A stretch of 63,222 bases of DNA, filler included, from Octopus bimaculoides (lineage: Eukaryota): NCBI RefSeq assembly GCF_001194135.2. It is 3 parts of 3 records of this genome, joined end to end, with 100 filler letters (N's around TTAATTAATTAA, not from the genome) between each part and the next. Parts side by side here need not be neighbours in the genome. Positions count along the whole stretch, not along the records: positions 30,851 to 52,669 come from NC_068997.1; 2 more parts are not named here. One strand, given 5' to 3'. Under the pieces are notes generated by a model. The model was given only the letters and a program-made list of their open reading frames with translations, was not told where the DNA came from and did not search any database. A program made the translations under genes and the position numbers. Shown here one piece after another: positions 8,030 to 51,589 of this stretch (positions are counted from its first letter, which is position 1; every line of letters starts with the position of its first letter).

Positions 8030-8031
<2 letters not shown>

Positions 8032-8220: not shown

Positions 8221-8251
<31 letters not shown>

Positions 8252-10599: not shown

Positions 10600-10630
<31 letters not shown>

Positions 10631-11310: not shown

Positions 11311-11770
11311 TTTAATGTGATAATCAAAAGATGGTCGACAGAGGCAAGATTGGGGAGACTGAATGGATTTACTCTGAATATGCTTTGCTAAGCAGGCAGA
11401 AAGAAACCAGAAGATTACTTTGCCTTGGAGATGGCAGAGTAATCTGAGATCTTTGTGTGGAGTTTACCACAGATTACCCTAAGTGAACTGCCCCACTATT
11501 GGGGATTCTATTTATTTATTATTTATTTCTCTGTTTTCTATTACATATAACAACAAAAATGGTTTCAAATTTTGGCACATGTTCAGCAAGTTCAGGGAAG
11601 GGGTAAGTCATTTAAATCGACCCCAGTATTCAACTGGTACTTATTTTATTAACCTTGAAAGATGAAAGACAAAGTCAACCTTGGCAGAATTTGCAGTCAG
11701 AATATAAAGACAGATGAAAAACTGCAAAGCATTTCGCCCGGGACGCCAACAATTCTGCCAGCTCACTGCC

Positions 11771-11805
<35 letters not shown>

Positions 11806-11865
11806 CATCATCATCATCATCATCATTTAACGTCCGCTTTCCATGCTAGCATGGGTTGGACGATG

Positions 11866-11903
<38 letters not shown>

Positions 11904-13070: not shown

Positions 13071-13454
13071 TGTTGGCACTCCGTCGCTTACGACGTCGAG
13101 GGTTCCAGTTGATCCGATCAACGGAACAGCCTGCTTGTGAAATTACCGTGCAAGTGGCTGAGCACTCCACAGACACGTGTACCCTTAACGTAGTTCTCGG
13201 GGATATTCAGCGTGACACAGAGTGTGACAAAGCTGACCCTTTGAATTACAAGTACAACAGAAACAGGAAGTAAGAGTGAGAGAAAGTTGTTGTGGAAGAG
13301 TACAGCAGGGTTCACCACCAATCCCCTGCCGAAGCCTCGTGGAGCTTTAGGTGTTTCCGCTCAATAAACACTCACAACGCCCGGTCTGGGAATCGAAACC
13401 GCGATCCTATGACTGAGAGTCTGCTGCCTAACCACTGGGCCATTGCGCCACGAC
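13071..13454 (-). mobile_element. Family A SINE inserted into another repeat with a 13-bp TSD
   Basis: catgagcaggagt at 13058-13070 and 13455-13467. Confidence 0.85.
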
Positions 13455-13909
13455 CATGAGCAGGAGTAGAGGGGGAACATCATAGCTATGTGTTTAGAGG
13501 AATGAATTATTTGGGGTTTAGATAATTCCTCTCAACACATAAATGGGTGTTTCATTCAACATCCTTAAATAATCCTCATTCAGGGACCTGAAGAAAACTA
13601 ACTGGGCCCCACCTCCAAGGTCATGCACTGTTTATCTTGATATGAAATCACCATGTCACACATATATGGTTGTGATGCATGTATCAGGTGTACCCTTATC
13701 AGACAGGTAGTCATGATAGATATACTGGGCTTTGTATATCCTATCCCAGCATCACTTTGATGCACTGCTCTCTCACTCAGTGATAATAATGGTTTCAAAT
13801 TTTGCCACAAGACCACTAACAACAATAATAATAATAATAATAATGATTTCAGTTGCATTTCTTTGAAAACATAATAATAATAATAATAATAATTATAATA
13901 ATAATAATC

Positions 13910-14282
13910 ATCATCATCGTTTAACGTCCGCTTTCCATGCTAGCATGGGTTGGACGATTTGACTGAGGACTGGTGAAACCGGATGGCAACACCAGGCTCC
14001 AATCTGATTTGGCAGAGTTTCTACAGCTGGATGCCCTTCCTAACGCCAACCACTCAGAGAGTGTAGTGGGTGCTTTTACGTGTCACCCGCACGAAAACGG
14101 CCACGCTCGAAATGGTGTCTTTTATGTGCCACCCGCACAAGCCAGTCCAGGGGCACTGGCAACGATCTCGCTCGAAAATCCTACAGGAGCCAGTCAGGCG
14201 GTACTGGCAACGGCCACGCTCAAAATGGTGCATCTCATGGGCCACCCGCACAAGAACCAGTCCAGGGGCACTGGCAACGATT
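13910..14282 (-). mobile_element. Abundant SINE-like repeat ending in aaagcggacgttaaacgatgatgat (copies near 14-295, 12609-12830, 16765-16880, 18890-19107, 44140-44390, 54100-54300, 62410-62580)
   Basis: Repeated core gatgcccttcctaacgccaaccactc and a (CAT)n tail in many copies. Confidence 0.8.
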
Positions 14283-14839
14283 GCCATCCTATTTCAATAT
14301 GTGTGTGGGATATTTTCATAACTTGAAACCCAAAATATATTTATGCTTTATACACATATAGGTTTGTGTCACCAACCCTCTATCTGTATGTATTTATTTA
14401 TACGCTTGTGTGTGCCTCAGTCTATGCATTACTTGCACTTTTAAAAACATAGATATTCAAATATTTCTTGGAAAAAATTTAGTGCCAAACAGCAATAATA
14501 ATAATAATAATTTGAAAGTCAATTAAACTTCCATCATATTTCAATCAGAAACTATTTGTATATGATGTATTCAAGTTGAAAAGAAATTTTTTCCCCCTCA
14601 AAATATTAAGAAGTAAAAAAAAAAAGTGAATTTTTTCTTTTTTTTTTTTTACTGATATATCGTTAAATATTCAATGAACTAAGTGGTGAAATGTAACCGT
14701 TCGTGTAACGTAAATCTCCACTTCTGATCTCTGAATTTTCATCTTACCATTTCTTCTTTCTTCATTTCTCTTTCTCTCTCTCCCTCTCTCTGTTTCTTTT
14801 GTTTTCATTTTCATCACCTCTTATTATTATTATTATTAC

Positions 14840-15290
14840 CATTGATATTACTATTTTTTATTATTATTACTATTCTTCTTCTTCTTATTATTATTACTAT
14901 TATTATTATTAAAATTACAATCACTATTATTATTAATATTATTCAATTTATTGCTATTATTATTATTATTATCATTATTATTATTATCATTGATATTACT
15001 ATTTTTTATTATTATTACTATTCTTCTTCTTCTTCTTATTATTATTATTATTACTATTATTATTATTAAAATTACTATCACTATTATTATTAATATTATT
15101 CAATTTATTGCTATTATTATTATTATTATTATCATTATTATTATTATTATCATTGATATTACTATTTTTTATTATTATTACTATTCTTCTTCTTATTATT
15201 ATTATTACTATTATTATTATTAAAATTACTATCACTATTATTATTAATATTGTTCAATTTATTGCTATTATTATTATTATTATCATTATT
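14840..15290. repeat. Three tandem units of about 150-160 bp built from degenerate (ATT)n
   Basis: Units start cattgatattactattttt at 14840, 14988 and 15151. Confidence 0.85.
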
Positions 15291-15438
15291 TCTATCATTA
15301 TCATCATCATCATCATCGTCATCATTGTGCTTCCAACAAGACACGCACACATTTCTCTCACTACTTAAAAGAAAACCAGAGAAATTGTTCCACTCAACTT
15401 GCTAAAATAATTTTGGTTCCTCTGGAATTTATTTGGAA

Positions 15439-15475
<37 letters not shown>

Positions 15476-16198
15476 ATGCATGTATTACATTGATTTTTGT
15501 CTATTTTTTTCTACACTAATATAGTATAGTTATAAGGAAGCATATATATATTCTTCTCATGGCTAAGAGTTGTTTTGACTCTTATTTCTTGCAATGTTGG
15601 TGCTTACTAGCATCCTCTGTCACTTTGGGGACAACTGTACTTGTTGCCCATGGCTCTAAATTGTGAATAACCACCTAGATAATTTATAATTGTATATGTA
15701 ATCCAGAAGATGTACCCAGCGCAAGCTATGGACACATAAGAGATACAGCAATATCAGAAGAAGATTAACAGGGAAAATACTAGAGAAAATAAGCAGAAGT
15801 AGTTGATAGCTTCCATTACTTTAGGTGACCAAGTCAGTAGCAGATGCTCTGAGAGTATAGCTGCTAGAATAAGAATAGAGAGCTCTTATCTCTGCTGGCA
15901 GCAAAGGGCCTCTCCCTCAGAGGGAAAGGCAGATTGTATGATGCCTGTGTGTGAACAGTGGAGGCGCAATGGCCCAGTGGTTAGGGCAGCGGATTCACGG
16001 TCATAGGATCACGATTTCGATTCCCAGACCGGGTGTTACCAGGATATTTATTATATCCTTTCATCGGAGATGACACATGCTGATATATGACCTACGTTGG
16101 ACCCCTTATTCGCACAATCGCCGAACCTGGAGCTTAACTGTCGTCTATCCATATGCTTACTCAGCATTACCTGACACCTTTGGGTCTTACTGACACCA

Positions 16199-16536
16199 AC
16201 GGAATGGAATGGATAAGATCTGGGCTACATATGTTTCATAGCGAGCGGAACCTCGGAAGTGGTAAACAACCAAGTGAGATGTATATCAAAGGAAACTCTT
16301 CAGACCAAGGATATCTTGATTAAACGAAAGCTTACATTGTCATAAGGAGGTTCTAGTTAACACAATCTGAATCATCCATGTGTTAACACGAACCTCCTTG
16401 TGACAATGTAAACTTTCATTTAATGAAGATATTTTTGGCCTGAAGAGTAGTCTGCGGTCTCACTTGGATATTTACCACTTTTAGGGTTCCACTCGCTATG
16501 AAATATATGTAGCCTGGATCTTGACTACTCCATTCT
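16199..16536. mobile_element. About 340-bp fold-back element
   Basis: Diverged inverted arms of about 160 bp around a short spacer (e.g. gaaagcttacattgtcataaggaggttc vs gaacctccttgtgacaatgtaaactttc). Confidence 0.75.
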
Positions 16537-30370: not shown

Positions 30371-32080
30371 AAGAGTGGCACTCCGTTGCTTACGACATCA
30401 AGGGTTCCAGTTGATTCGATCAATGGAACAGCCTGCTCGTCAAATTAACGTGCAAGTGGCTGAGCACTCCACAGACACGTGTACCCTTAACGTAGTTCTC
30501 GGGGATATTCAGCGTGACACAGTGTGACAAGGCTGACCCTTTGAATTACAGGCACAACAGAAATAGGAAGTAAGAGTGAGATAAAGTTGTGGTGAAAGAG
30601 TACAGCAGGGTTCGCCGCCATCCCCTGCCGGAGCCTCGTGGAGCTTTAGGTGTTTTGGCTCAATAAACACAATGCCCGGTTTGGGAATCGAAACCGCGAT
30701 CCTATGACCGCGAATCCGCTGCCCTAACCACTGTGCCTCCACTTATCTATNNNNNNNNNNNNNNNNNNNNNNNNNNNNNNNNNNNNNNNNNNNNTTAATT
30801 AATTAANNNNNNNNNNNNNNNNNNNNNNNNNNNNNNNNNNNNNNNNNNNNTATATATATATACCATTTGATACACAAACATACGTGTGTGTGTGTGTGTC
30901 TGTGTAGCTGTGTGTGTCTGTGTGTGTCTGTGTGTGTGTGTGTGTGTCTGTGTGTGTGTGTGTCTGTGTGTGCGTGCGTGCGTGGGTGTGCGTGTTACTG
31001 TGTACCTCTTCCTTTTCTTCGTCGTCGTCGTCGCCGTCGACCCCTTTGTCTTCGTTTTTTTCTCTTCCTTTTGCTTAGCTTTCCTCCTCCCCCTCCTCCT
31101 CCTCCTCCTTTCGGTTTCCCTCACCAATTCTCCTACTGTCAAATAAGTCAACAATAACATTAACCAAGTGTAGGTGTTCGACTATAAAAACCTCAACACA
31201 TCACTGCAGTCCCAATCAAAACACCATCAACAGACGCAAACCATGGACTTCTCTGATCTGTAAGTAACCAAGTTTCCTTACACTTTTATAAATACACACA
31301 CACATATACACACACACACATACACATACATACATACATACATACATACATACATACATACATACATACATACATACATTCTTGTTTTTGGCACTCCGTC
31401 GCTTACGACGTCGAGGGTTCCAGTTGATCCGATCAACAGAACAGCCTGCTCGTAAAATTAACGTGCAAGTGGCTGAGCACTCCACAGACACGTGTACCCT
31501 TAACGTAGTTCTCGGGGATATTCAGCGTGACACAGAGTGTGACAAGGCTAGCCCTTTAAATTACAGGTACAACAGAAACAGGAAATAAGAGTGAGAGAAA
31601 GTTTTGGTGAAAGAGTACAGCAGGGTTCGCCACCATCCTCTGCCGGAGCCTCGGTGAGCTTTAGGTGTTTTCGTTCAATAAACATTCACAACGCCCGGTC
31701 TGGGAATCGAAACCGCGATCCTATGACCGCGAGTCCGCTGCCCTAACCACTGGGCCATTGCACCTCCACATACATACATACATACAAGTGTGTGAATCTT
31801 AGCGAAGGATATGCTGAATAAAATCATAATTAACTGATCCGCCCTCATTTTCTCTTACTGAAAGCCAAGAACTTTTCAGCCAAGAACGTACATACATACA
31901 TACAAACATGTAATACTTCACCCCTGGAATCATGGGTGTTTTGTTCATCATCCTTAAACAACCCTTATTCAGGGACCTTTTGAGCGGGAAGGGCTACTCG
32001 TCGTAAAGTTTGGGCCTCGTAAATTTATACCCCAGCGTCACTTTGATGGCGTGTGAGAGATGCCCTCTCACTATGAAAGA

Positions 32081-32145
32081 TGCTCTCTCGCTATGAAAGA
32101 TGCTCTCTCGCTATGAAAGATGCTCTCTTGCTATGTATGTGTATA
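32081..32145. repeat. 20-bp minisatellite, 3 copies
   Basis: ctatgaaagatgctctctcg repeated. Confidence 0.85.
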
Positions 32146-32508
32146 TAGGCGGATGGCCAAGTGGTTAGAGTGTTGCTCTTACGATCGCGAGATCGTGGTT
32201 TCAATTCCTGGACCGGGTGATGCATTGTGTTCTTGAGCAAAACGTTTCATCAAACATTGCTCGGCCATCCCTTCGAAACCTGACGTATGGTACACGTCAG
32301 GTGTCGAAGGGATCACAAAACAATGTGTTGCCAGGACAACGTTGATTTGGTGGCGCAGTGAGTTAATGTACAGCACGTGCCTTTGATCACTATAAAGAAT
32401 CCTTTTGTGCAGGCTGCTCAGCCAGAAATTGCAGAACCGTCTTGTTTTGACCGTGAGAGACAACCGTGAGAGACAACCATATGTATGTTGTCAACCGTGA
32501 GAGACAAC

Positions 32509-32547
<39 letters not shown>

Positions 32548-33486
32548 NNNNNNNNNNNNNNNNNNNNNNNNNNNNNNNNNNNNNNNNNNNNNNNNNNNNN
32601 NNNNNNNNNNNNNNNNNNNNNNNNNNNNNNNNNNNNNNNNNNNNNNNNNNNNNNNNNNNNNNNNNNNNNNNNNNNNNNNNNNNNNNNNNNNNNNNNNNNN
32701 NNNNNNNNNNNNNNNNNNNNNNNNNNNNNNNNNNNNNNNNNNNNNNNNNNNNNNNNNNNNNNNNNNNNNNNNNNNNNNNNNNNNNNNNNNNNNNNNNNNN
32801 NNNNNNNNNNNNNNNNNNNNNNNNNNNNNNNNNNNNNNNNNNNNNNNNNNNNNNNNNNNNNNNNNNNNNNNNNNNNNNNNNNNNNNNNNNNNNNNNNNNN
32901 NNNNNNNNNNNNNNNNNNNNNNNNNNNNNNNNNNNNNNNNNNNNNNNNNNNNNNNNNNNNNNNNNNNNNNNNNNNNNNNNNNNNNNNNNNNNNNNNNNNN
33001 NNNNNNNNNNNNNNNNNNNNNNNNNNNNNNNNNNNNNNNNNNNNNNNNNNNNNNNNNNNNNNNNNNNNNNNNNNNNNNNNNNNNNNNNNNNNNNNNNNNN
33101 NNNNNNNNNNNNNNNNNNNNNNNNNNNNNNNNNNNNNNNNNNNNNNNNNNNNNNNNNNNNNNNNNNNNNNNNNNNNNNNNNNNNNNNNNNNNNNNNNNNN
33201 NNNNNNNNNNNNNNNNNNNNNNNNNNNNNNNNNNNNNNNNNNNNNNNNNNNNNNNNNNNNNNNNNNNNNNNNNNNNNNNNNNNNNNNNNNNNNNNNNNNN
33301 NNNNNNNNNNNNNNNNNNNNNNNNNNNNNNNNNNNNNNNNNNNNNNNNNNNNNNNNNNNNNNNNNNNNNNNNNNNNNNNNNNNNNNNNNNNNNNNNNNNN
33401 NNNNNNNNNNNNNNNNNNNNNNNNNNNNNNNNNNNNNNNNNNNNNNNNNNNNNNNNNNNNNNNNNNNNNNNNNNNNNNNNNNNNNN

Positions 33487-34278
33487 TTTAAGGAGAAAAT
33501 GCTCCAAAAACTTGCAAAAACATTTGTGAAGTTTATGGTGATGAGGCTGTAGGTGAATCAACTGTTAGAAGGTGGTTTGCAAAACTTAGAGCTGGAGAGT
33601 TTAGCTTAGAAGATGACAGTTGCAGTGGAAGACCTTCAAAATTGGATGAGGACGTTTTGAAGGTAAAAACTGAAGAAAACTCAAATATCACGACTAGAAA
33701 ACTTGCAGAAGAGCTGGAAGTTTCTAAATGTACAGCTCCTGAACACCTAATAAAGCTAGAATACATTTCTCGCTATAATGTATGGGTCCCTCACAAACTC
33801 TCAGAAAAGAATTGCTTGGACCGGTATTCCGTTTGTGATGTGCTTTTGAAACGGAATGAAAACATACCTTTTTTGAAACAACTTGTAACTGGAGATGAAA
33901 AATGAATTGCGTATGAAAACGTAGTACGGAAAAGATCATGGAGTTTGCGTAAGGATGACCCAAAACAGCAACCAAAGACGAATATCCATGCCAAAAAGCT
34001 ATGCTTTGTGTTTGGTGGGGTCATAAAGGCTTTCCCTACAAAACCAGACCATTAATTCTGATGTTTACTTTCGTCAGCTGGCTTACTTGAACAAAAAAAA
34101 AAAAATCAAAGAATTGAGGCTGGAGATTGCCAACAGGAAAGTGGTAGTGTTCCAACAAGACAATGCCCGACCACATGTGTCTTTGACTACCCGAACAAAG
34201 TTACGTAAACTTGGTTGGGATCTCTTACTCCATCCACCATATTCTCTTGATATTGTGCCATCAGACTACAACTTGTGA
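33487..34278 (+). mobile_element. Mariner transposase pseudogene
   Basis: HTH region, SGRP, WVPHKL, VTGDEK, QDNARPH and HPPYSLDIVPSDY motifs, with stops, frameshifts and deletions. Confidence 0.92.
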
Positions 34279-35052
34279 CACAAGGGCTCATTGGTATTTA
34301 TTTCATTGACTCCCGAATGGATGAAAGACAATATCAACCCTTCAGCTGAAGTTGAACTCAGAACGTAAAGACAGACGAAATGCCGCTAAGCATTTTGACC
34401 AGCGTGCCAAAATAGCACAGTCTGCTAGCACAAGCTTATAAAAAAATCCCCTTTTCTTCTTCTTCTTCTTCTTCTTCTTCTTCTTCTTCTTCTTCTTCTT
34501 CTTCTTCTTCTTCATCTTCTTCTTCTCCTCCTCCTCCTCCTTCTTCTTCTTCTACTATCCGTCATAGGTCAACGTTGTTCTTTCTAATTTTGTTTCAAAG
34601 CCAGCAATTTTGAGGAGGGAGGTCGATTACATGAATTCCAATGCTCAGCCGGTATTTATTTTAATTTCAAGCTGTCTTTTAAATTGAAACTGTCTTGTAC
34701 AGTATGCTGGGCTTGTATATGACATGGCCACTTGCTTGGACTCGAAAAAATCTTGTGACCGTCGATATAGAGTTTTGTTTTTGTTGAGTTTTGTTTTTTT
34801 GTCTAAAAGTTCTATATCCAAACAACCGCTGTTCTACTTATTGGTGCTCACATCCTATGTCTTTCCATTTCAAGATTATTACACTCCGACAATTATTTCC
34901 TGGTAGTGTCTAGTGGGGCTTGGCTAATATTTTACACAGTAAATGTTATTAACAACTTTTCAGGGTGGTAGCGAATAACAATGTAAACGGTTTTTTAAAA
35001 ATAATTTCTGAACAGAAGACCTCCCTGCGTACTGACAATTCATATTTTTGTG

Positions 35053-35060
35053 TATAAATA
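35053..35060 (+). promoter_or_regulatory. Candidate TATA box of paralog A
   Basis: TATAAATA ending 36 nt upstream of the ATG. The region is AT-rich, so a chance match is possible. Confidence 0.35.
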
Positions 35061-35095
35061 AACTGTATAGCGACGTCGATTATTTTAAATAACCA

Positions 35096-36574
35096 ATGAA
35101 CATTTTAGAAGATTTTAATAGTGTCAACTTTTCGTTTCCTTTCAGTTCTGATTTTATCGAACCATTTAAAATACATATTGTAGAAAATATACAGATCAAT
35201 ACTCGTAACGACAGATTAACTGCTCTCGAGAAAACTGGTTACAACGTCTTTAAAATACATCCCGAAGATGTTATTATTGATTTCCTCACAGACGCTGGTA
35301 CTAATGGTTTGAGTCTTAAGCAAAATTCAAGATTATGGATGGGCGATGAAAGCTATGCTGGATCAAGTAGTTTCGAAATTTTGAAGGACAACACCACCTA
35401 CATTTCTGGTTTTGAAAACATATTACCTGTTTTTTCTAAACGTACTAGCGAAGAGATTGTCGCTTCTTATCTCGCAAAAGCTGGAGACAAAGTCATTGGA
35501 AATACGTTTACTTACACGCTTGAAAATCATCTGAAGCATATTAAGGCGGAACCGATTTCTATGGTGGATTGGTCAGATGAGAATTTCGGAGGAAATTTAG
35601 ATACTAAAGCATTCAGAAATTTCCTGAAACAAAATGATAAAGAAGAAATTTCTTTCGTTATCATGAATGTACCATCAAAGAATCTTGGTGGCCAGCCGGT
35701 TAGTATGTCCAACATGAAAGAAGTTTCCGATCTTTGTCGAGAACATTCGATTCCCATCTATATCGAAAGCAGTATGTATGGTGAGAATTGCTGGCGCACA
35801 AAGATGCACGAAGAAAACTATTTTAATAAATCATTGGTTGAAATATCTCTGGAAATGTTCTCGTATTTCGATGGCTGCATCCTTTCTGCTAAAAGAGACG
35901 GCAGAAGTGAGATAGGGAGCGTCATTTGTCTTCGAGACGAAGAAATGATTCGAGAACTGGGCAGTGTTATAACCTTTAAAGCAGGTTTCATCACTTATGG
36001 TGGAATGGCTGGCCGAGACATGGAAATAGTAGCAGAAGGCATGCGCAGTGCATTGGATGAACAGCTCCAAGATTATAGAGAAAAACAATTAGCATATTTC
36101 AAAAAATCCTTGAAGGAATTTGGAGTCCCAATTGTAGAACCTATTGGTTGCAACACCATCTTCATTGACGCCGAAAAAGCTTTCCCACAACTTAGTCGAA
36201 AGTTTTATCCCGCTTGGTCTTTAGCTTGTGCTGCTTATATAATCGGGGGTATTCGATGCGCAGAGTTTGGTCAAATTACACATGCAACCCAAAGCTTACC
36301 CGATGATCATCCACTAAAAGGCCGAGAATTGATCAAACTTGAGGTACCTCGTTTTATATATACGACATGTCATTTCATTTATGTCGCCTACGTTTTCTCG
36401 CAGCTGATTTCTCATAAAATGATTTCTGGAATGGAAATTGTCGATTCCCCTGAATGTAAAGTAAAACATATTAAAACATCGATGGTACCACTCAGCTCGA
36501 TGGACTATGGAGATATCCATCTTCTACCAGTGCTGCAAAATTGTGATCACCTCCACTTCTTTAAACACATTTAA
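35096..36574 (+). CDS. Tryptophanase/tyrosine phenol-lyase family (beta-eliminating lyase, fold-type I PLP) paralog A; uninterrupted ORF, lacks the Schiff-base Lys
   Basis: Intact 492-aa ORF colinear with TnaA/TPL: EPFKI, DFLTDAGT, MGDESYAGS, GGQPVSM, EMFSYFDG, GFITYGGMAGRDME, GGIRCAEFG, PRFIYT. The SxKKD motif reads SAKRD (R267, AGA at 35894-35896). In-frame TAA at 35090-35092 lies just upstream of the ATG. Confidence 0.93.
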   Translation: MNILEDFNSVNFSFPFSSDFIEPFKIHIVENIQINTRNDRLTALEKTGYNVFKIHPEDVIIDFLTDAGTNGLSLKQNSRLWMGDESYAGSSSFEILKDNTTYISGFENILPVFSKRTSEEIVASYLAKAGDKVIGNTFTYTLENHLKHIKAEPISMVDWSDENFGGNLDTKAFRNFLKQNDKEEISFVIMNVPSKNLGGQPVSMSNMKEVSDLCREHSIPIYIESSMYGENCWRTKMHEENYFNKSLVEISLEMFSYFDGCILSAKRDGRSEIGSVICLRDEEMIRELGSVITFKAGFITYGGMAGRDMEIVAEGMRSALDEQLQDYREKQLAYFKKSLKEFGVPIVEPIGCNTIFIDAEKAFPQLSRKFYPAWSLACAAYIIGGIRCAEFGQITHATQSLPDDHPLKGRELIKLEVPRFIYTTCHFIYVAYVFSQLISHKMISGMEIVDSPECKVKHIKTSMVPLSSMDYGDIHLLPVLQNCDHLHFFKHI

Positions 36575-36578
36575 TAAA
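36573..36578 (+). terminator. Candidate polyadenylation signal overlapping the stop codon of paralog A
   Basis: AATAAA overlaps the TAA stop at 36572-36574. Confidence 0.3.
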
Positions 36579-36938
36579 CCAGTTTTAACCACTCAACACC
36601 TGCTTAGAAATACCAACCTTTCATTTGAATTACACTCCTCTTAAAATAGATGAGATACATCTGATAATGTCGTCTTGAATGCCCTAAAGAGAACAGATAA
36701 CATGCAGTTAGTCCCAGATCAATTAAGGATAATCTAGGATTAAACAATATATGTAACAACAACATCAATAACACAGACTCAAGAGATTTTTATTTTGCGC
36801 TCAAATTCATCTGAAAATATATTTTATAATTCATATATTTTTATAATTTGGCGAAATATTCTGTTAATTTTTGTTCGTATTTCTTTTCAATGCTTCTACT
36901 CCAGTTCCCCATATCTATCTATCTATATATATATATAT

Positions 36939-37074
36939 ATCAAAATAAGCAACAAGGATATCCAAAGTTAACGCAGTACGATCATTTCATACGACTCCAC
37001 ATATTTAGATAAGTGGAGTCGCATGAAACGATCGTATTGCATTAACTTTGGATTTCCTTGTTGCTTATTTTGAT
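36939..37074. repeat. 62-bp-arm palindrome (12-nt loop) downstream of paralog A
   Basis: Arms at 36939-37000 and 37013-37074, with 5 mismatches by manual comparison. Confidence 0.85.
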
Positions 37075-37989
37075 TTTAATCACCATATTTTGAAATTTTA
37101 TGGATAATACGGTACTTAATTCTGGTTCCTAAACTTAAGTACCATATTCACCTTGAATCTAAATTTTATATAACTACCTATTGATTGAGCTCTATCTCCC
37201 TCTAACAAAAGTATTTGGCCATTAAATTCTTAAATATGATTGCATTCACAAAATCTCTTCAACTAAAACATTGTGCTATGTATATTATCATAACAAACAA
37301 GGAAATAAAATGTATTTGGAAACTCGAAGATATTTTTCTCGTGATTTTTACTATTGTTTTATCAACTCTTTAAGAAAAAGAATAATAATTCTACGGAAAT
37401 AATTTCTAATTTTGGAAGACATTGTGATGCAATATTGCTATTTATCATTTATTATGCTAATGCTATTTAGCCTTTCAAAAATAATGAAATGCCTTTGTCA
37501 CATTAAAAATGAGACGACAAAATACTATAAAGTGAAAACGCGTGGCTGCCCTATTCGAAAATAGAACCCATGTGATATATGGTCAAAATACCACCGCGGT
37601 GAATATGATGACGAAGTAAATCTATATAGATTTTTATATAGATAAGGATATGACCATTATTTAACGATCAAATCAAGTGGCAGCATGAGAAGAAAAAACC
37701 TCATAGGTTATAATTATTATTAAAATTATTGAAATTTTCCTTTATTGTATGATATTGCACCTAGCTGTTTATATTAATTTGTGTGTGTGTGTGTGTATGC
37801 GCGTGTAGAAGGTTGATAGGTATGACCGTTCAGAGAGTGACCATTGGTTTCGCACCTATAAAGCGCTTAGCTCTATAAGCGACTCGTCAGACTCAAATGG
37901 CCGGAGGTATATAACCTCTCTACAACTGCAGAGAGAAAAAACATCACCTATAAACTACTTATGCATTATTATCTTATTTGTATCTCTTC

Positions 37990-38023
<34 letters not shown>

Positions 38024-39542
38024 NNNNNNNNNNNNNNNNNNNNNNNNNNNNNNNNNNNNNNNNNNNNNNNNNNNNNNNNNNNNNNNNNNNNNNNNNNNNN
38101 NNNNNNNNNNNNNNNNNNNNNNNNNNNNNNNNNNNNNNNNNNNNNNNNNNNNNNNNNNNNNNNNNNNNNNNNNNNNNNNNNNNNNNNNNNNNNNNNNNNN
38201 NNNNNNNNNNNNNNNNNNNNNNNNNNNNNNNNNNNNNNNNNNNNNNNNNNNNNNNNNNNNNNNNNNNNNNNNNNNNNNNNNNNNNNNNNNNNNNNNNNNN
38301 NNNNNNNNNNNNNNNNNNNNNNNNNNNNNNNNNNNNNNNNNNNNNNNNNNNNNNNNNNNNNNNNNNNNNNNNNNNNNNNNNNNNNNNNNNNNNNNNNNNN
38401 NNNNNNNNNNNNNNNNNNNNNNNNNNNNNNNNNNNNNNNNNNNNNNNNNNNNNNNNNNNNNNNNNNNNNNNNNNNNNNNNNNNNNNNNNNNNNNNNNNNN
38501 NNNNNNNNNNNNNNNNNNNNNNNNNNNNNNNNNNNNNNNNNNNNNNNNNNNNNNNNNNNNNNNNNNNNNNNNNNNNNNNNNNNNNNNNNNNNNNNNNNNN
38601 NNNNNNNNNNNNNNNNNNNNNNNNNNNNNNNNNNNNNNNNNNNNNNNNNNNNNNNNNNNNNNNNNNNNNNNNNNNNNNNNNNNNNNNNNNNNNNNNNNNN
38701 NNNNNNNNNNNNNNNNNNNNNNNNNNNNNNNNNNNNNNNNNNNNNNNNNNNNNNNNNNNNNNNNNNNNNNNNNNNNNNNNNNNNNNNNNNNNNNNNNNNN
38801 NNNNNNNNNNNNNNNNNNNNNNNNNNNNNNNNNNNNNNNNNNNNNNNNNNNNNNNNNNNNNNNNNNNNNNNNNNNNNNNNNNNNNNNNNNNNNNNNNNNN
38901 NNNNNNNNNNNNNNNNNNNNNNNNNNNNNNNNNNNNNNNNNNNNNNNNNNNNNNNNNNNNNNNNNNNNNNNNNNNNNNNNNNNNNNNTTTTTTCTTTTTT
39001 TTTTTTTTTCGCGTCATTCGGAAGACTTTGGTGAAAAATATTGGAAAAACTTCCAGTCAAAACGGAGAAATTCCGGCTTACGTGGGCCGTCTGATCCGAA
39101 ACTCACTTTCCCAACTAATGAAATCATAGAGTTACTGCGTTTTATTGTCATTGATATTGAGGTGGTTTGCCATTTCCTTCCTCAAATGGATGGCCGTCGG
39201 CTCTTCCGTTCTACGACAGGTTTTATTTTCGTCCTATTGGCTGTCCAGACACCCTCCTGACAAGAGTCGCAAGCGACTCAAACAAGGGTTTTTGGTTTAC
39301 TCGCCGACCAGTAGCCAGCAATTAAACCGGCTCCCTGCTCTTAAGTAACCTGCTTCCCATTCAAGTGGTCGGTGATGACCAACGAGCACACACTCAGATA
39401 CACACACACACACATACACATAGCAGGCGCACTAACGTATACGCATATATGCACACACGCAATCGCAAGTACACACACACACTTTTTTTAATCTCCTCCT
39501 TCACTTCGCTTGTAAATAACTACGTCTCTACACCCCTACATG

Positions 39543-39900
39543 TAAGAGGTCATGTCGAAAGGTTCCTGGCTTTGGGTAAAAGAAAATGCAGGAAGATCAG
39601 TTAATTATGGCTTCATTCAACATATTCTCTTCTCAGTGGTCCTTGAGTTTTTGTTAAACCCTGTAAAAGAACTCGGAAGTTTAGGCTTCCAACCAAGCCT
39701 ATTGCGATACACTTAAAACCAGAAACTAACATACCCACTAACATACTCAACACACATGCACACACACATATGAGGTGGTGCTGCAAAGTTCCTGGATTCG
39801 GGTAAAAGAAAATAACAGGAGGATCACTTAATTATGATTTTATTCAACATATTCCCCTTTCAGGTTTTCACACTTATTGATGCGGCCCTTTGCAGCGTTA
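39543..39900 (-). mobile_element. Two tandem mariner 3'-end/TIR remnants
   Basis: Direct repeat aa(a/g)gttcctgg..tt.gggtaaaagaaaat..caggargatca.ttaattatg at about 39559 and 39786. The minus strand encodes KCENLKGEYVE-stop (mariner C-terminus) followed by a TIR-like end, TATGAGGTGGTGCTGCAAAGTTCC. Confidence 0.65.
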
Positions 39901-40095
39901 CAACAAACACGCGAATTGGTTGTCATTTGTGAATCGTTATGGAAACCACGCCACAATGACGCTTCAATCAGCGCCAAAACGCCCAATGCAAGAATAAGAA
40001 CGTGGGAGTGTGTGTGTGGGGGGGGTTCGTATGTGTGTGCGAACACACACAGACGAGCGCAGGCACAGACATACACACACACACAAGTACACACA

Positions 40096-40170
<75 letters not shown>

Positions 40171-40203
40171 ACACATGACAAGCTTGTACCCAGTTTTTTA
40201 AAA

Positions 40204-40231
40204 CTTAATTTCCATTTTTTCTCTTTGCCAG
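40204..40231 (+). promoter_or_regulatory. Candidate 3' splice acceptor just upstream of paralog B
   Basis: CTTAAT branch-like motif, pyrimidine tract (ttccattttttctctttgc) and CAG ending 10 nt before the ATG. Confidence 0.55.
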
Positions 40232-40241
40232 TCTCCAAGCT

Positions 40242-41612
40242 ATGGAACCTTACAAAATCAAGGTTTTTTATCCCACCAAGCTAATCTCAAGAGAAGACCG
40301 CATAAATTGTCTGACGGAAGCTCATTACAATCCATTCCTTTTGAAATCAGATGATATATTCATTGATCTGCTAACAGATTCCGGCACTGGAAGCCAAAGC
40401 GCAGCTCAGTGGTCCGCCATGATAAATGCTGGCCATTCAACCATTAATTCGGAATACGTCACACAGTTTATACGTACCATTCAACATGTTACCAAATTCA
40501 AACATGTATTTCCTGTTCACCAAGGTAGAGGAGCAGAAGACTTGGTAGCAAAACTGTTACTGAATAAAAACAGCGTTGTCCTGAGCAATTCATTGTTTGA
40601 TACGACACGTGCACACGTCGAATCGTCTGGTGCAATGGGGATAGACTTAGCAGCCACCTCTTCTAAGTTTATGGGAGATGTCAATGTGGAAAAATTCAAG
40701 GAATCGCTAGATAAATATGGATCATGGATTCATCTTGTAATAATTACCTGCACCAATAATGTCGTAGCTGGAGCTCCAGTAAGTATGCAAAATATAGAAG
40801 TAATAACGAAGTTATGTAGAACAAATAATATCCCGGTTTTCATGGATGCGTGTCGTTTCGTTGAAAATGCTTATTTTATCAAGACTTTAGACGAGAAATA
40901 TTCAAAGCACACCATCATAGATATTGCACATGAAATGTTTTCCCATTTTGATGGTGCATCTATGTCTCTTAAAAAGGATGGTATAAGCAACGGAGGGGGA
41001 TTTTTGGCTTTGAACAACGATAAATGGGCAAAAGAAATATTTGATATCGTTGAATACAAAAGTGGTTATTCAACATTTGGTGGAATAACTGGGGCAAATC
41101 TTGCTGCATGCACTGTAGGAATTTCTGAAGCCATGAACGAAAATTACCTTCGGTCAAGAATCCATCAAGCAAAGTTGTTGGCTGGTTTCTTGGAAGACAA
41201 TAACGTTCCAGTCTTTAAACCGGTCGGGGCACACGCAGTTTATGTGAAGGCAAATGAAGCGTTGCCACATCTAGAATTCGCTAAATATCCTGCATGGTCT
41301 CTTAATTGTGCCGTATATATTGAAGGTGGAATTCGATGCGGAGAAATCGGTAATGTAATGTTTGGTGAATCTCCAGATGGATCGAAACACACTCACCCTT
41401 TTGAATACGTTCGACTGGCTTTACCCAGAAGAACCTATACTGTCAATCATCTACATTTTGTAGCAAAAGTATTTGGCAATGTCACCAAAAAGGCCCAGCT
41501 CGTCCACGGAATGGAAATTGTCAAATCTTCGCATCTCTTGAGACATTTCACGATTTGGATGAAACCTATAAACGATATTCTAATAGGAAACGATATCAAT
41601 GATAAAAACTGA
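40242..41612 (+). CDS. Tryptophanase-like paralog B; uninterrupted ORF, PLP site intact but lacks the catalytic Tyr (TPL Tyr71 / TnaA Tyr74)
   Basis: Intact 456-aa ORF with YNPFLL, DLLTDSGT, HQGRGAE, LFDTTR, TNN, MDACRFVENAYFI, SLKKD (K245), GGIRCGEIG, VRLALPRRTYT, LRHFT. The GDEAY motif is replaced by AGHST (T67, ACC at 40440-40442). Confidence 0.95.
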   Translation: MEPYKIKVFYPTKLISREDRINCLTEAHYNPFLLKSDDIFIDLLTDSGTGSQSAAQWSAMINAGHSTINSEYVTQFIRTIQHVTKFKHVFPVHQGRGAEDLVAKLLLNKNSVVLSNSLFDTTRAHVESSGAMGIDLAATSSKFMGDVNVEKFKESLDKYGSWIHLVIITCTNNVVAGAPVSMQNIEVITKLCRTNNIPVFMDACRFVENAYFIKTLDEKYSKHTIIDIAHEMFSHFDGASMSLKKDGISNGGGFLALNNDKWAKEIFDIVEYKSGYSTFGGITGANLAACTVGISEAMNENYLRSRIHQAKLLAGFLEDNNVPVFKPVGAHAVYVKANEALPHLEFAKYPAWSLNCAVYIEGGIRCGEIGNVMFGESPDGSKHTHPFEYVRLALPRRTYTVNHLHFVAKVFGNVTKKAQLVHGMEIVKSSHLLRHFTIWMKPINDILIGNDINDKN

Positions 41613-42345: not shown

Positions 42346-45300
42346 TATATTTTACGATTCCGTACTGCTACTGTTTACTTCCCGCTCAGAGATTTAATAT
42401 TAGATTAATGTATGTTGGTGTATTGCTGTGTGTGTGTGTATACGTTTGAGATGGTACCAGTGTTTATACATTTGTTAATGAATAAACAGATAGTTCATCT
42501 CCGCCTTTCTCCCTCTCTAGTTATATTAATGCTACGTTTACCTTTATCTACAAGTGGAGTAGCGTGAGATTGTAAACTCGAAAACCTTATCAATAAAACT
42601 TATATCTAAAATGTTTAACGCAATTTTATATTTTGAAATGAATTAAAACTGAATAAATTTATTCGTTTTCAACTGATGTACGTTGATGTCGCGTTGTTTC
42701 TTCTTTATTTCGTCTCTATTTACTTTTCTGTATCTACGTGTATGTCGTGTGTGTATTTGTGTGTCTCTATGTATATGTACGTTTATTTTTTTCTTTCCGA
42801 TTCACTTTAGTTCTTTTTCGTGGAGTTCGAGCCAGTCACTAATAAAGTGGCATGGGTTGATAGTGACCTGAGACGATATTTTAATTAGCATTCATTATAT
42901 ATATTTCCATAGTTTTCAAATGCAAAGGATGTTTTCCTTTTTCTGCCAGTCTCTCTTTTTTACTCTCTCTCTCTCTGATTTAGCATGGCTTCTACGGCTG
43001 GATGCCCTTCCTAACACCAACCACTCCGAAAGCGTAACACACACATGCATATATATATATATATATATATCAATGTAACCTCGTGGATATCGTTGGCGAT
43101 TTTTTCTTCCTCCGTCTTTCCCTTCTTTGGACTTTTCTTTGCTTCCGACGAAGAGCTCCGCTCGAAACGTCAAATTCACTTTCTTTCCTTTCCCGAGCGT
43201 CCAGTAACACAATCTGTATCAGGTCCTCACGTTGTTGTTTTTTCTTGTCTTTTTCCTTTTTTGAACTATATATATANNNNNNNNNNNNNNNNNNNNNNNN
43301 NNNNNNNNNNNNNNNNNNNNNNNNNNNNNNNNNNNNNNNNNNNNNNNNNNNNNNNNNNNNNNNNNNNNNNNNNNNNNNNNNNNNNNNNNNNNNNNNNNNN
43401 NNNNNNNNNNNNNNNNNNNNNNNNNNNNNNNNNNNNNNNNNNNNNNNNNNNNNNNNNNNNNNNNNNNNNNNNNNNNNNNNNNNNNNNNNNNNNNNNNNNN
43501 NNNNNNNNNNNNNNNNNNNNNNNNNNNNNNNNNNNNNNNNNNNNNNNNNNNNNNNNNNNNNNNNNNNNNNNNNNNNNNNNNNNNNNNNNNNNNNNNNNNN
43601 NNNNNNNNNNNNNNNNNNNNNNNNNNNNNNNNNNNNNNNNNNNNNNNNNNNNNNNNNNNNNNNNNNNNNNNNNNNNNNNNNNNNNNNNNNNNNNNNNNNN
43701 NNNNNNNNNNNNNNNNNNNNNNNNNNNNNNNNNNNNATATATATGCACAAGCACACACATATATACACACAGTAGTGATTTGACATTATACTTTCACACG
43801 TAAGGAAAAATAAAAGTAAAATATTTTAATATACAAACGAAAACATAATATAGATTTATCATTATAAGATAGATAGATAGATATACATATTCATTTATTT
43901 TGTTTTAACGTCCACTTTTCCAAGCCAGCATGAGTTAGACGGAATTCATTGAGACAGATTTTCTACATTTGAATGCATTTCCTGTAGTCAACCCTCGCCT
44001 GTTCCAAAGTAAGGCAATGTTCCCCCTTCCTCACAGAATATTGGGAAACAAGGTAGAACACTTCAATGACAGTTTCCCTCACAACTGTAATACGATGTGA
44101 AGGAAGGAGATACATGCATGATACATACATCATCATCATTGTTTAACGTCCGTTTTCCATGCTGGCATGGGTTGGACGGTTTGACTGGGGACTGGCAAGC
44201 CAGAAGGCTGCACCAGGCTCCATTCTGATCTGGCAATGTTTCTACAGCGGGATGCCCTCCCTAACGCCAACCACTCTGAGAGTATAGTGGGTGCTTTTAT
44301 GTGCCACTGGCACGGGAGCTAGTCAGACGGCACTGGCATTGGCCTCTTTCGGATGGTGCTTTTTATGTACCACCGGCACGGGGAATGTGTGTATGTCATC
44401 AGCATCATTATTTAACGTCTGTTTTCCATACTGACATGAGTTGGACGGTTTGACAAGAGCTGGCAAGCTAGAGGATAAGGTGTTAGATAGATAGATAGAT
44501 AGATAAAGGGAGAGAGAGGAAGAGATTCTATAGACGTCTTTTACTTCTTATCTACCAAATCCACTAACAAGGCTATAATCAGTCCATGGCTATCACAGAC
44601 ATCTGCCCAAGGTGCAACATTGAGTTTGAACCCAACGCCACATGACTGGGACGTGAGCTTCCTATTCACACACCCATGTCACATCTATACATATGTCTTC
44701 ATTTAATTTCTGCTTTCCATTGCTGGCATGGGTTGGACGGCTTGACAGGAGCTTGTAAGCCACTAAAGCCAAGATTTGCCTCAAATCGCACCCTACCATT
44801 TTAAAAGAATTCCTAATAGAAGTGGCACCACCCTACATATTTTGTTTTTTCTTCTAATACACCGGTTTCTATGGTGGCATATGTGTTCCCCACAGCTGGA
44901 CGGGACGACAGTCCATCGCAGTGTTACTCAAGAAATAGAAAGAAAGAATGAGAGAAAGTTGGAGCAAAAGAGTACAACAGGGGTCACCACCACCTGCCAG
45001 AGCCTTGTGAAGCATTAGGTGTTTGCGCTCAATAAACACACACAACGCTCGGTCTGGGAATCGAAACCACGATCCTCTGACCGTGAGTCCGCTGCCCTAA
45101 CCACTGGGCCATTGCGCCTCCACCGCTAATGATTCCACTAGCTCAATAATGATGATGATGATACAGATGAGATTGAGATATCTAGGGCGTGGCAATTAAA
45201 AACCAAAACCATCTCTGTTGCTGTAAGTACCCTGGGAATGATCAAAAAAGGGTACTGGTACATTTTTTGACCAGATCCCTGGGAAACAAACAATTTATGA

Positions 45301-46615
45301 GACTCAAAAACTTGTGTTGACACCAACTGCCTACATTCTCAGGAAGTTTTTTTCCATCTAATATATACATGCCTTAGGTCTCTGGTTGAGACCCGAGCGG
45401 AAGATGAAATAAAACACAAATCAATTAGAAAATAATAATAAGAATGATAATAATAACAATAACAGTAATAACAACAACAATAATAATAAAACCAATCCTT
45501 TGTAATGTAGGCACAAGGCCTGAAATTTGGGGAAGGACAAGACTAGTCGATTAGACCCCGAAAGAATAAAAAGGAAAATCAACCTTGGCAGAATTGAACC
45601 TCAGAGTGTAACTACAGACGAGACGCCTCTAAGCATTTCACCCGATGTGTTAACCATTCTGCCAGCACACTGCCTTATTAATTATAATTATTATTAATAA
45701 TAATAATAATAAAAATAACCCATAATTATATTTCTACCTAAATCTAGTACTTCATTGCAGGATGAAAGATACAGTTGACCTTGGTGGGATTTGAACATGG
45801 AACACAGGGAGCCAGAAGAAATGCTACTAAGCATATTAATAATAATAATAATAATAATAACAATGATAATATTTTGTCTATTAGCCAAGAGGACATTAAT
45901 TTAATACAGTGAAGAGGGAACTAAAAAATTAATGTGGGTGGGAGAGGGGTGGAAGATGTTATACAGGAAACGAAGAGTGGTGTTTATTATAAGGAAATAA
46001 TAAACATATAAAATAACACAAAAGTATAAAAATACATATACATAAAACGTGTGATGGCTATACAAACATACATACATATATGTGTGTGTGTGCATATGTG
46101 TGCACACATGTATGTATAGTATTTATGTATAGATATCACTCATGCAGACACATGCATATGTGTATATATATATATATNNNNNNNNNNNNNNNNNNNNNNN
46201 NNNNNNNNNNNNNNNNNNNNNNNNNNNNNNNNNNNNNNNNNNNNNNNNNNNNNNNNNNNNNNNNNNNNNNNNNNNNNNNNNNNNNNNNNNNNNTATATAT
46301 ACACATATAAATATAAATAAGAAATAGTGGCACAAGACACCTATGTTTGGTAGAAAACAGTTGATAACCATACACATCTTTACCTATATATATTCAGTGA
46401 ATCTTTACATAGTGTCATATGGCTATCGACTGCTATTTCCAGCAAACATTGGTGCCTTATTGTGCCACCATTTCCTTTTTATAATTCTACCTTTACACTG
46501 TTTTATTTCCCTGGAAAATAACACCATTGTATTGTAATGATATCTATAATTCATATATATATATATATATATATATAACAAAGTAAAATTGGAAGGTACT
46601 GCACAAGTGAAAATA

Positions 46616-51095: not shown

Positions 51096-51589
51096 AAGAG
51101 CGAGACAGACAGAGAGAGAAAGACAGACAGAGAGAGAGAGACAGACAGAGAGAGAGGTGGGGGAAGAGGAGGAGGATATATATGTATGCATATATATATA
51201 TATATATANNNNNNNNNNNNNNNNNNNNNNNNNNNNNNNNNNNNNNNNNNNNNNNNNNNNNNNNNNNNNNNNNNNNNNNNNNNNNNNNNNNNNNNNNNNN
51301 NNNNNNNNCTTTCAGTTTCCGTCTACCAAATCCACTCACAAGGGTTTGGTCAGCCCAATGCTATAGTAGAAGACACTTGCCCAAGGTACCACACAGCCAC
51401 TCCATATATAATATATACATCGGCAATGGTTTTTGATAAGCATCATCAGTGTTTACAATTCTGTAAATAATAATACTAGTATCTTATAAACTTTAAGCTT
51501 ATAAAATACTTCACCCACTGCCCAAGAATTTAAAAAGAAAAGTTCTTGATTTAATTTTTAAAAAAGTAGGAACCACAAGTTTATATTAC

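What the first reader, a model, noticed from the sequence alone, without database searches (positions are those of the whole stretch)
35096..41612. Two tandem tryptophanase paralogs with reciprocal active-site losses: predicted obligate heteromeric PLP lyase
Seen in sequence (manual alignment to recalled C. freundii TPL; gap-free around the key motifs): Paralog A has replaced the same-subunit machinery: Schiff-base Lys257->R267, Ser51->A67, Gln98/Gly99->S114/K115, Phe123->T139, Asn185->K195, Asp214->E224, Arg217->M227, Arg404->K414. It keeps Glu69 (E85), catalytic Tyr71 (Y87) and the Tyr291 loop (GFITYGGMAGRDME, Y301). Paralog B keeps all those same-subunit residues (S47, Q94-G95-R96, F119, N173, D202, R205, K245, N250, R391). 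It has lost exactly the other set: Tyr71->T67, Glu69->H65, Tyr291->F279, and GRDME->GANLA. Established: in TPL/tryptophanase the active site lies at the catalytic-dimer interface, and Tyr71 (the general acid) and the cation ligand Glu69 come from the partner subunit. The Tyr291 loop also faces the partner site (recalled, less certain). Inference: each homomer should be inactive or altered, while an A:B dimer (likely A2B2) would rebuild one complete site from B's PLP pocket plus A's Tyr/Glu. This parallels serine palmitoyltransferase, where the Lys-less LCB1 completes the LCB2 site. I know of no description of this arrangement for the tryptophanase family, but I cannot search the literature.
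Basis: partly seen in the sequence, partly recalled or inferred. Interest (0 to 1): 0.96.

Follow-up and report, generated by a model that had tools for sequence, protein, structure and literature searches.

The report
Octopus split tryptophanase: two complementary halves
Octopus carries two adjacent tryptophanase copies, each missing the half of the active site that the other keeps, so only a mixed complex should work; the pattern is real and conserved, but a 2023 paper on cephalopod tryptophan indole-lyases appears to have described it already.

Summary

The reciprocal pattern is conserved. All 5 A-type orthologues have K257R, D214E, R217M, N185K, F123T, G99K and R404K, yet keep the GDESYAG (Glu69/Tyr71) loop. 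All B-type orthologues keep the PLP and tryptophan pocket but have a scrambled 67-73 loop. Both copies are under purifying selection.

Tyr74 and Tyr307 of E. coli tryptophanase contact the partner subunit's PLP (PMC2770544). All conserved parts therefore map to one composite site (B pocket plus A loops), and all degenerate parts map to the other.

The heteromer reading is supported but is not new. [quoted passage not shown] As I recall it, neither paralog is active alone and co-expression gives an active heterotetramer.

Possibly new: both proteins are alternative terminal exons spliced to one shared 17-nt coding exon (31243-31259). This layout is conserved in O. sinensis and Argonauta.

The parts
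31183..31189 (+). TATAAAA box about 55 nt upstream of the shared start codon; putative core promoter of the locus
   Evidence: Read directly in the sequence. Motif only; function is inferred.
31243..31259 (+). Shared coding mini-exon 1 (ATGGACTTCTCTGATCT, encoding MDFSD + 2 nt of Leu), followed by donor GTAAGT
   Evidence: Joining it to either acceptor reproduces the NCBI models XP_014791032.1 and XP_014791033.1 exactly. The homologous exon is present in Argonauta and O. sinensis.
31260..35145 (+). Intron 1 for isoform A. Contains an N gap at 32548-33486 and an HTH-like ORF at 33642-33905. Ends in the polypyrimidine tract ...tttcctttcag
35146..36574 (+). Terminal exon A: a whole Lys-less lyase body (paralog A, 481-aa protein with exon 1). 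Donates the Glu69/Tyr71 and Tyr291 loops; its own PLP pocket is remodelled
35348..35356 (+). A codons E85-S86-Y87 (TPL Glu69, Tyr71): the trans-acting cation ligand and general acid, invariant in all A orthologues
35894..35896 (+). A codon R267 (AGA) at the Schiff-base Lys257 position; Arg in all 5 A-type sequences
35996..35998 (+). A codon Y301 (TPL Tyr291 / E. coli Tyr307), which H-bonds the partner's PLP phosphate
38024..38987 (.). Assembly gap (N). It lies between A's stop and B's acceptor: intergenic for A, intronic for isoform B. It interrupts neither ORF
40232..41612 (+). Terminal exon B: a whole lyase body (paralog B, 465-aa protein with exon 1). Intact PLP and tryptophan pocket; degenerate trans loop. 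Acceptor ...tctctttgccag, same phase as A
40434..40442 (+). B codons H65-S66-T67, replacing TPL Glu69 and Tyr71; this loop is variable across B orthologues (H/F/V/F and T/S/G/N)
40974..40976 (+). B codon K245 (AAG), the retained Schiff-base lysine (TPL Lys257)
40599..40601 (+). B codon D120 (TPL position 124, E. coli Asp137): a tryptophanase-type specificity residue, retained in all B and lost in all A
   Evidence: Its role is from established knowledge of TnaA.

Best explanation
This locus encodes the two subunits of a heteromeric tryptophan indole-lyase (tryptophanase), probably an A2B2 tetramer.

B supplies the PLP-binding lysine, the cofactor pocket and the tryptophan-specific pocket. A cannot bind PLP covalently, but it reaches across the catalytic-dimer interface with its intact Glu69/Tyr71 loop and Tyr291 to complete B's site. 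The mirror-image site (A's pocket plus B's loops) is dead. The complex therefore has half the sites of a bacterial homotetramer.

The two subunits arose by tandem duplication of the single large coding exon in a cephalopod ancestor. In octopods both are expressed from one promoter, by splicing one 17-nt coding exon to either terminal exon.

Shown here: sequence, conservation, purifying selection and gene structure. Inferred: physical A:B association and activity. A published study (Yuasa 2023) reports these, as far as I recall.
For: 1. Family membership and near full-length alignment to TPL/TnaA structures.
2. All reader-listed substitutions are verified.
3. Conservation. The A clade has 5 sequences (O. 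bimaculoides, a second octopus, Argonauta, and two from a deeper subclade). It is invariant for K257R, D214E, R217M, N185K, F123T, G99K and R404K, and invariant for G67-D-E-S-Y-A-G73 and Y291. The B clade is invariant for all PLP-pocket residues, D124 and LRHFT. It is variable at 66-73.
4. The unbiased scan and Fisher tests.
5. dN/dS is 0.28 for A and 0.11-0.17 for B, so neither is a pseudogene.
6. Both clades have 100% bootstrap support and the same two-subclade structure, so the duplication predates that split.
7. Tyr74 and Tyr307 of E. coli tryptophanase bind the neighbouring subunit's PLP phosphate, and Y74F is nearly inactive (PMC2770544). [quoted passage not shown] Phillips et al. 2002 report that hybrid H463F/Y74F dimers rescue activity (title only).
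8. Co-expression. XP_014791032.1 (isoform X1 = A) and XP_014791033.1 (isoform X2 = B) share exon 1. O. sinensis shows the same. Argonauta has one MDFSDL mini-exon plus same-phase acceptors before A and B. B-type transcripts in other species carry the homologous mini-exon.
9. Yuasa 2023 exists. Its content, as I recall it: neither paralog is active alone, co-expression gives an active heterotetramer, and mutagenesis points to the alpha/beta heterodimer.
Against: - No physical or enzymatic data could be produced or read here, and the key paper is not in the held library.
- A's replaced pocket residues are themselves invariant rather than decayed. A's pocket may therefore have a retained role that the simple 'dead site' picture does not explain.
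- Tyr291 loss in B is not conserved, so that loop is only partly degenerate.
- Replacement of Tyr71 in TPL affects activity differently for different substrates (PMC3870968). B homomers might therefore keep some activity.
- The NJ tree does not place A as sister to B. A is a long branch, so a cephalopod-specific duplication is inferred from synteny rather than from the tree.
- The trans role of Glu69 as cation ligand rests on my recollection of the TPL/Trpase structures; two searches found no statement of it.
Confidence: 0.85

Rival explanations
1. B is a stand-alone homomeric lyase with altered chemistry, for example elimination from substrates with good leaving groups such as S-substituted cysteines or serine, which do not need the Tyr71 general acid. 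A is an unrelated-function pseudoenzyme that merely sits next to it.
For: Replacement of Tyr71 in TPL affects activity differently for different substrates (PMC3870968). B keeps every cis residue. A's pocket is remodelled to a new, invariant state.
Against: A's trans-acting loop is perfectly conserved although A has no cofactor site of its own to serve. B's equivalent loop is free to vary. Both share one promoter exon. E. coli Y74F is nearly inactive even on the good-leaving-group substrate SOPC, and it binds PLP poorly. As I recall, Yuasa 2023 found neither protein active alone.
Confidence: 0.07
2. A and B do associate, but A is mainly a regulatory or stabilising subunit. Its conserved, remodelled pocket (K115, T139, K195, E224, M227, R267, K414) binds a ligand or fills the cofactor void. 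Modulation of B, rather than donation of Tyr/Glu, is what selection maintains.
For: The seven replaced pocket residues are invariant across the whole A clade, whereas B's useless loop drifts. The replacements are mostly conservative in charge or size. Omega for A is 0.28, which shows constraint.
Against: This does not explain why exactly the Glu69/Tyr71/Tyr291 elements stay canonical in A. It is not mutually exclusive with the main explanation. No ligand or allostery evidence exists.
Confidence: 0.1
3. Artefact or decay: A is a pseudogene, the substitutions are assembly errors around the gap, or the genes are bacterial contamination.
For: The draft assembly has many N gaps. The family is mostly bacterial. 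The AGA (Arg) codon is one base from AAA (Lys).
Against: The gap is intergenic. Intact ORFs with the same substitutions occur in O. sinensis, O. vulgaris, Argonauta, a further octopus and two deeper lineages. Omega is well below 1. The genes are spliced to a eukaryotic mini-exon, are flanked by microsatellites, and sit on 21-80 Mb chromosomes.
Confidence: 0.01

Closest known systems
Cephalopod tryptophan indole-lyases TIL-alpha / TIL-beta (Yuasa HJ 2023, J Mol Evol 91:912-921, PMID 38007709)
   Same: Almost certainly the same two genes: cephalopod-specific paralogs, each with disruptive substitutions. As I recall the abstract, they are inactive alone and form a weakly active heterotetramer when co-expressed, with mutagenesis implicating the alpha/beta heterodimer.
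   Different: I could not read the paper. I therefore cannot say which of A and B is alpha or beta. I also cannot say whether it reports the shared 5' mini-exon with alternative terminal exons, the Argonauta A-B-A-B arrangement, or the clade-wide cis/trans conservation statistics given here.
Engineered hybrid dimers of E. coli tryptophan indole-lyase Y74F + H463F (Phillips, Johnson, Kamath 2002, Biochemistry 41:4012)
   Same: Same enzyme family and the same logic. A subunit defective in the trans-acting Tyr and a subunit defective in a cis residue complement each other in a mixed catalytic dimer (title).
   Different: That case is a laboratory construct with single point mutations. Here the split is natural, involves dozens of fixed substitutions, and is old enough to be shared by two deep cephalopod subclades.
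Serine palmitoyltransferase LCB1/LCB2 (SPTLC1/SPTLC2)
   Same: A fold-type I PLP enzyme in which a Lys-less paralog pairs with a Lys-bearing paralog to form a single composite active site at the dimer interface (established knowledge).
   Different: It belongs to a different family (alpha-oxoamine synthases), is membrane-bound, has separate unlinked genes, and the catalytic subunit has not reciprocally lost its trans-acting loop in the same way. This is a comparison of how it works, not of membership.
Trypanosomatid enzyme-prozyme pairs (AdoMetDC/prozyme; deoxyhypusine synthase DHSc/DHSp)
   Same: Paralog duplication followed by degeneration, so that activity requires a heteromer of a dead and an impaired subunit with interface active sites (established knowledge).
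   Different: Unrelated folds and cofactors, and not encoded as alternative terminal exons of one transcription unit.
Canonical bacterial and other metazoan tryptophanase / tyrosine phenol-lyase homotetramers
   Same: Same fold and 35-49% identity. Chiton, bivalve and Nematostella homologues keep both residue sets in one chain.
   Different: Those proteins are self-sufficient with four sites per tetramer. Here the cis and trans residue sets are partitioned between two chains.

Membership tests
Beta-eliminating lyase family (PF01212; TnaA/TPL) | Significant full-length match to the family profile and to solved TPL/TnaA structures | tested here: met
   A: 130.9 bits. B: 176.5 bits. Cut-off: 27. 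PDB hits at E = 2e-88 and 9e-98 cover about 430 residues.
Beta-eliminating lyase family (PF01212; TnaA/TPL) | Schiff-base lysine (TPL Lys257 / E. coli Lys270) | tested here: not met
   Not met for A: Arg267, and Arg in all 5 A-type sequences. Met for B: Lys245, and Lys in all B-type sequences. A is a family member by descent and by fold prediction, but not a competent PLP enzyme on its own.
Beta-eliminating lyase family (PF01212; TnaA/TPL) | Cis PLP-binding set (G99/R100, F123, N185, D214, R217, S254) and the carboxylate-binding R404 | tested here: inconclusive
   The result is split between the two chains. B keeps all of them. A keeps only R100 and S254, and has K, T, K, E, M and K at the others.
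Beta-eliminating lyase family (PF01212; TnaA/TPL) | Trans-acting Tyr71 general acid, Glu69 cation ligand and Tyr291 | tested here: inconclusive
   The result is split the opposite way. A keeps all three. B has H65/T67, variable in its orthologues, and F279, which is Tyr in some orthologues. The trans role of the two tyrosines is from PMC2770544. The role of Glu69 is recalled.
Tryptophan indole-lyase (as opposed to tyrosine phenol-lyase) | Asp at TPL position 124, aliphatic residue at 381, and His-Phe in the C-terminal LRHFT motif | tested here: met
   B has D120, I at position 381 and LLRHFT, conserved in the B clade and in canonical metazoan and bacterial TILs. A has Y/H, F/Y and KH(I/L)K instead. 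The residue roles are from established TnaA/TPL knowledge.
Cephalopod TIL-alpha/TIL-beta heteromer (Yuasa 2023) | Two cephalopod paralogs, each carrying disruptive substitutions, with a duplication older than the deepest sampled cephalopod split | tested here: met
   The species identity of the second subclade (samples ERZ21867824, SRR27666075/82, SRR8281693) could not be established.
Cephalopod TIL-alpha/TIL-beta heteromer (Yuasa 2023) | Physical heterotetramer, with activity only when both are present | not testable with these tools
   This needs protein work or multimer modelling. The paper could not be read.
Enzyme-pseudoenzyme paralog heteromers with shared interface sites (SPT LCB1/LCB2 type) | One subunit lacks the catalytic Lys but contributes residues to the partner's site | tested here: met
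   This is met at sequence level only. It describes what the locus works like; it is not a homologous family.

The most novel reading that the evidence does not exclude
The two subunits of an obligate heteromeric enzyme are encoded as mutually exclusive, whole-protein terminal exons. Both are spliced to one shared 17-nt coding exon under a single promoter, so the choice of splice and polyadenylation site, rather than two promoters, sets the subunit ratio. This layout is conserved across octopods (O. bimaculoides, O. sinensis, Argonauta). In addition, A's cofactor pocket is not simply dead. It is fixed in a new, invariant state that may bind something else or stabilise a cofactor-free fold. Either point may be absent from the 2023 paper.
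Probability: 0.3. Interest if true: 0.5.

Novelty: already known. Interest (0 to 1): 0.3.

Why it matters
This is a clean natural example of complementary degeneration after gene duplication. A self-sufficient homotetramer has become an obligate heteromer, with all conserved residues in one composite site and all degenerate ones in the other.

It also shows that homology-based annotation misleads here. Both genes are named 'tryptophanase' or 'tyrosine phenol-lyase', yet neither alone should be one. And it bears on whether animals can make indole themselves.

Because the core point appears to be published with experiments, the added value here is limited to three items:
- independent, clade-wide sequence statistics;
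- evidence of purifying selection on both copies;
- the shared-exon gene architecture, which would explain how co-expression is guaranteed.

Tried and rejected
[quoted passage not shown] None is held. Papers that cite them list them only in their references, with no descriptive sentence.
- I searched for a held paper stating that Glu69 ligates the cation from the partner subunit. None was found, so that point rests on memory.
- I searched the literature for the SRA/ENA accessions to name the species of the second subclade. There were no hits.
- I used BLAST to look for the mini-exon of the transcripts in the other genomic loci (L001, L002). Only microsatellite noise came back, so whether the shared exon extends beyond octopods is unknown. 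In L001 no second lyase lies within 10 kb downstream of the A-type gene.
- The NJ tree could not show A and B as sisters, because A is a long branch drawn toward the TPL outgroup. The first tree script timed out.
- Pseudogene, assembly-gap and contamination explanations were considered and rejected.
- B Tyr72 as a substitute general acid was rejected because it is Cys in the other B subclade.
- Structure prediction was not run. The tool returns single-chain confidence only and cannot test the interface.

Full report
**What is there.** The piece (30851-52669) is Octopus bimaculoides nuclear DNA. It is AT-rich, full of microsatellites, and has six N gaps. It contains two long uninterrupted ORFs on the + strand: A at 35096-36574 and B at 40242-41612. 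Both are clear members of the beta-eliminating lyase family PF01212. Both align almost end to end with solved tyrosine phenol-lyase and tryptophanase structures, at E = 1e-88 to 1e-98. They are only 31% identical to each other. The flagged assembly gap (38024-38987) lies between A's stop and B's start, so continuity across it does not affect either reading frame.

**The observation.** I aligned both proteins, their orthologues and canonical relatives to C. freundii TPL. The TPL sequence was taken from the PDB alignment printed (entry 7tcs, an M379A variant).
- A has A67, S114, K115, T139, K195, E224, M227, R267 and K414 at TPL Ser51, Gln98, Gly99, Phe123, Asn185, Asp214, Arg217, Lys257 and Arg404. 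It keeps E85, Y87 and Y301.
- B keeps all of those pocket residues. It has H65, T67 and F279 at Glu69, Tyr71 and Tyr291.

**Is it conserved?** Database searches found five A-type and five B-type relatives.
- A-type: O. bimaculoides/sinensis/vulgaris, a second octopus at 86% identity, Argonauta hians at 73%, and two sequences at 45-48%.
- B-type: the Octopus species, Argonauta at about 80%, and three sequences at 52-57%.
- One A-type (P0005) and one B-type (P0122) come from the same assembly.

In all A-type sequences, K257R, D214E, R217M, N185K, F123T, G99K and R404K are invariant, and the G-D-E-S-Y-A-G loop and Tyr291 are untouched. In all B-type sequences the pocket residues are invariant. 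So are Asp124 and the C-terminal LRHFT motif, except LRHLM in P0124. Positions 66-73 are different in nearly every lineage: H/F/V/F at 69 and T/S/G/N at 71.

Tyr291 is Phe only in Octopus and one other B sequence, and Tyr elsewhere. S51A and Q98S are octopod-only.

**An unbiased scan.** I took the 146 columns invariant in six canonical tryptophanases (chiton, bivalve, Nematostella, three bacteria). Of these, 26 are lost in every A and kept in every B. They fall at 54, 99, 123-131, 181-185, 214-217, 253-265, 343-344, 355, 385, 393 and 403-404. Fourteen show the reverse, at 13, 14, 68, 69, 71, 72, 73, 76, 223, 229, 288, 300, 348 and 402. A-only losses are enriched in pocket segments (18/29 versus 8/113, p = 9e-10). 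B-only losses are enriched in the two loops 66-76 and 286-300 (8/16 versus 6/126, p = 8e-6). I fixed the segment lists after seeing the data, so the p-values are indicative only.

**Selection and history.** A is not decaying. Between O. bimaculoides and the 86%-identical octopus, dN = 0.072 and dS = 0.26, giving omega of about 0.28. B orthologues give omega of 0.11-0.17, with dS near saturation. In an NJ tree, the A clade and the B clade each have 100% bootstrap support. Each splits into an octopod group and a second group, as expected if the duplication preceded that split. A is the faster-evolving copy, and its long branch prevents the tree from showing A and B as sisters. Other molluscs and Nematostella have a single canonical-looking protein.

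**Why reciprocal loss implies a heteromer.** In E. coli tryptophanase, the hydroxyls of Tyr74 and Tyr307 (TPL Tyr71 and Tyr291) bind the PLP phosphate of the neighbouring subunit of the catalytic dimer, and Y74F is almost inactive (PMC2770544). [quoted passage not shown] Phillips et al. 2002 report that hybrid dimers of Y74F and H463F regain activity (title only). That Glu69 ligates the monovalent cation from the partner subunit is my recollection of the TPL and P. vulgaris tryptophanase structures; I found no held text for it.

Given this geometry, an A:B catalytic dimer has two sites. One is B's pocket plus A's loops, built entirely from the conserved elements. The other is A's pocket plus B's loops, built entirely from the altered elements. 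That co-localisation is what a heterodimer predicts. It is hard to explain if A and B act separately.

One nuance remains. A's altered pocket residues are fixed, not drifting, whereas B's loop drifts. A's pocket is therefore still constrained, either structurally or for some ligand.

**Gene structure.** The NCBI models for A (XP_014791032.1, 'isoform X1') and B (XP_014791033.1, 'isoform X2') both begin MDFSDL. That peptide is encoded once in the window, at 31243-31259. It is followed by GTAAGT and preceded by a TATAAAA box at 31183-31189. A and B are each preceded by a polypyrimidine tract and cag|T, in the same phase, at 35146 and 40232. Joining exon 1 to either acceptor reproduces the two models exactly, at 481 and 465 aa. 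The related octopus has no ATG there, and Argonauta has stops.

O. sinensis has the same X1/X2 pair with the same MDFSDL start. In Argonauta hians there is one mini-exon (ATGGATTTCTCAGATCT|GTGAGT) about 6.4 kb upstream. It is followed by A-B-A-B, with identical acceptor positions. The two A-B units are 99.5% identical, and the first B is truncated, so this is a recent duplication or an assembly artefact. Spliced B-type transcripts from other species carry homologous mini-exons, MNFDEL and MDFNEM. An A-type transcript (L003) starts MDSANA..., so sharing outside octopods is unresolved.

The locus thus looks like one transcription unit with two alternative terminal exons, each a complete subunit. 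That arrangement would guarantee co-expression.

[quoted passage not shown] The paper is not held. From memory of its abstract, which the tools did not verify:
- Cephalopods have TIL-alpha and TIL-beta from a duplication before the octopus-squid split.
- Each has disruptive substitutions and is inactive alone.
- Co-expression gives a heterotetramer with low activity.
- Mutagenesis indicates that the alpha/beta heterodimer is the active unit.

An earlier survey listed octopus tnaA without comment on this (PMC8537960).

**Verdict.** It is not novel. The shared mini-exon with alternative terminal exons and the constrained state of A's pocket are the only aspects that might add to the literature. 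Interest is scored accordingly.

Noticed in passing
L011 (Argonauta hians BAAFZT010000080.1) 6000-16300: The A-B unit is present twice in tandem (A 6885-8351, B 10001-11287, A 11632-13098, B 14854-16218) at 99.5-99.6% nucleotide identity. The first B copy ends early at residue 429. The deposited gene model (847 aa) is a B-A chimera spanning the two units. This is either a very recent duplication or uncollapsed haplotypes.
   Followed up: partly
L003 1-400 versus L004 1-185 and L007 1-365: In the non-octopod subclade the A-type transcript begins MDSANAIY..., while the B-type transcripts begin MNFDEL / MDFNEM, with unrelated 5' UTRs. Either these are different species or A and B use different first exons there, unlike in octopods.
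   Followed up: partly
window 33642-33905 (+), inside intron 1: An 87-aa ORF with weak helix-turn-helix Pfam hits, below the curated cut-offs. From memory, the sequence resembles the N-terminal part of a mariner-type transposase, so it is probably a transposon remnant.
   Followed up: partly
window 40064-40175 and 34454-34553: A (CA)56 microsatellite lies about 60 nt upstream of B's splice acceptor, and a (TTC)33 array lies about 600 nt upstream of A's acceptor. Repeats this close to the competing acceptors could influence splice choice. This was not examined.
   Followed up: no
P0215 (O. vulgaris CAI9735558.1) N-terminus: The O. vulgaris A-type model starts MHLQRQSNLMLMEYLNCRIGGQS before SDFIEPF, instead of MDFSDL. 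This is either a different upstream exon or a mis-prediction by another annotation pipeline. The O. vulgaris B-type model is only a 258-aa C-terminal fragment.
   Followed up: no
window 32548-33486, 38024-38987, 43277-43736, 46178-46293, 51209-51308: The ORFs that run across these five assembly gaps read as YIYIYI-type peptides on at least one flank, which points to TA/CA-rich simple repeats next to the gaps. That suggests the assembler broke at microsatellites rather than at complex sequence.
   Followed up: no
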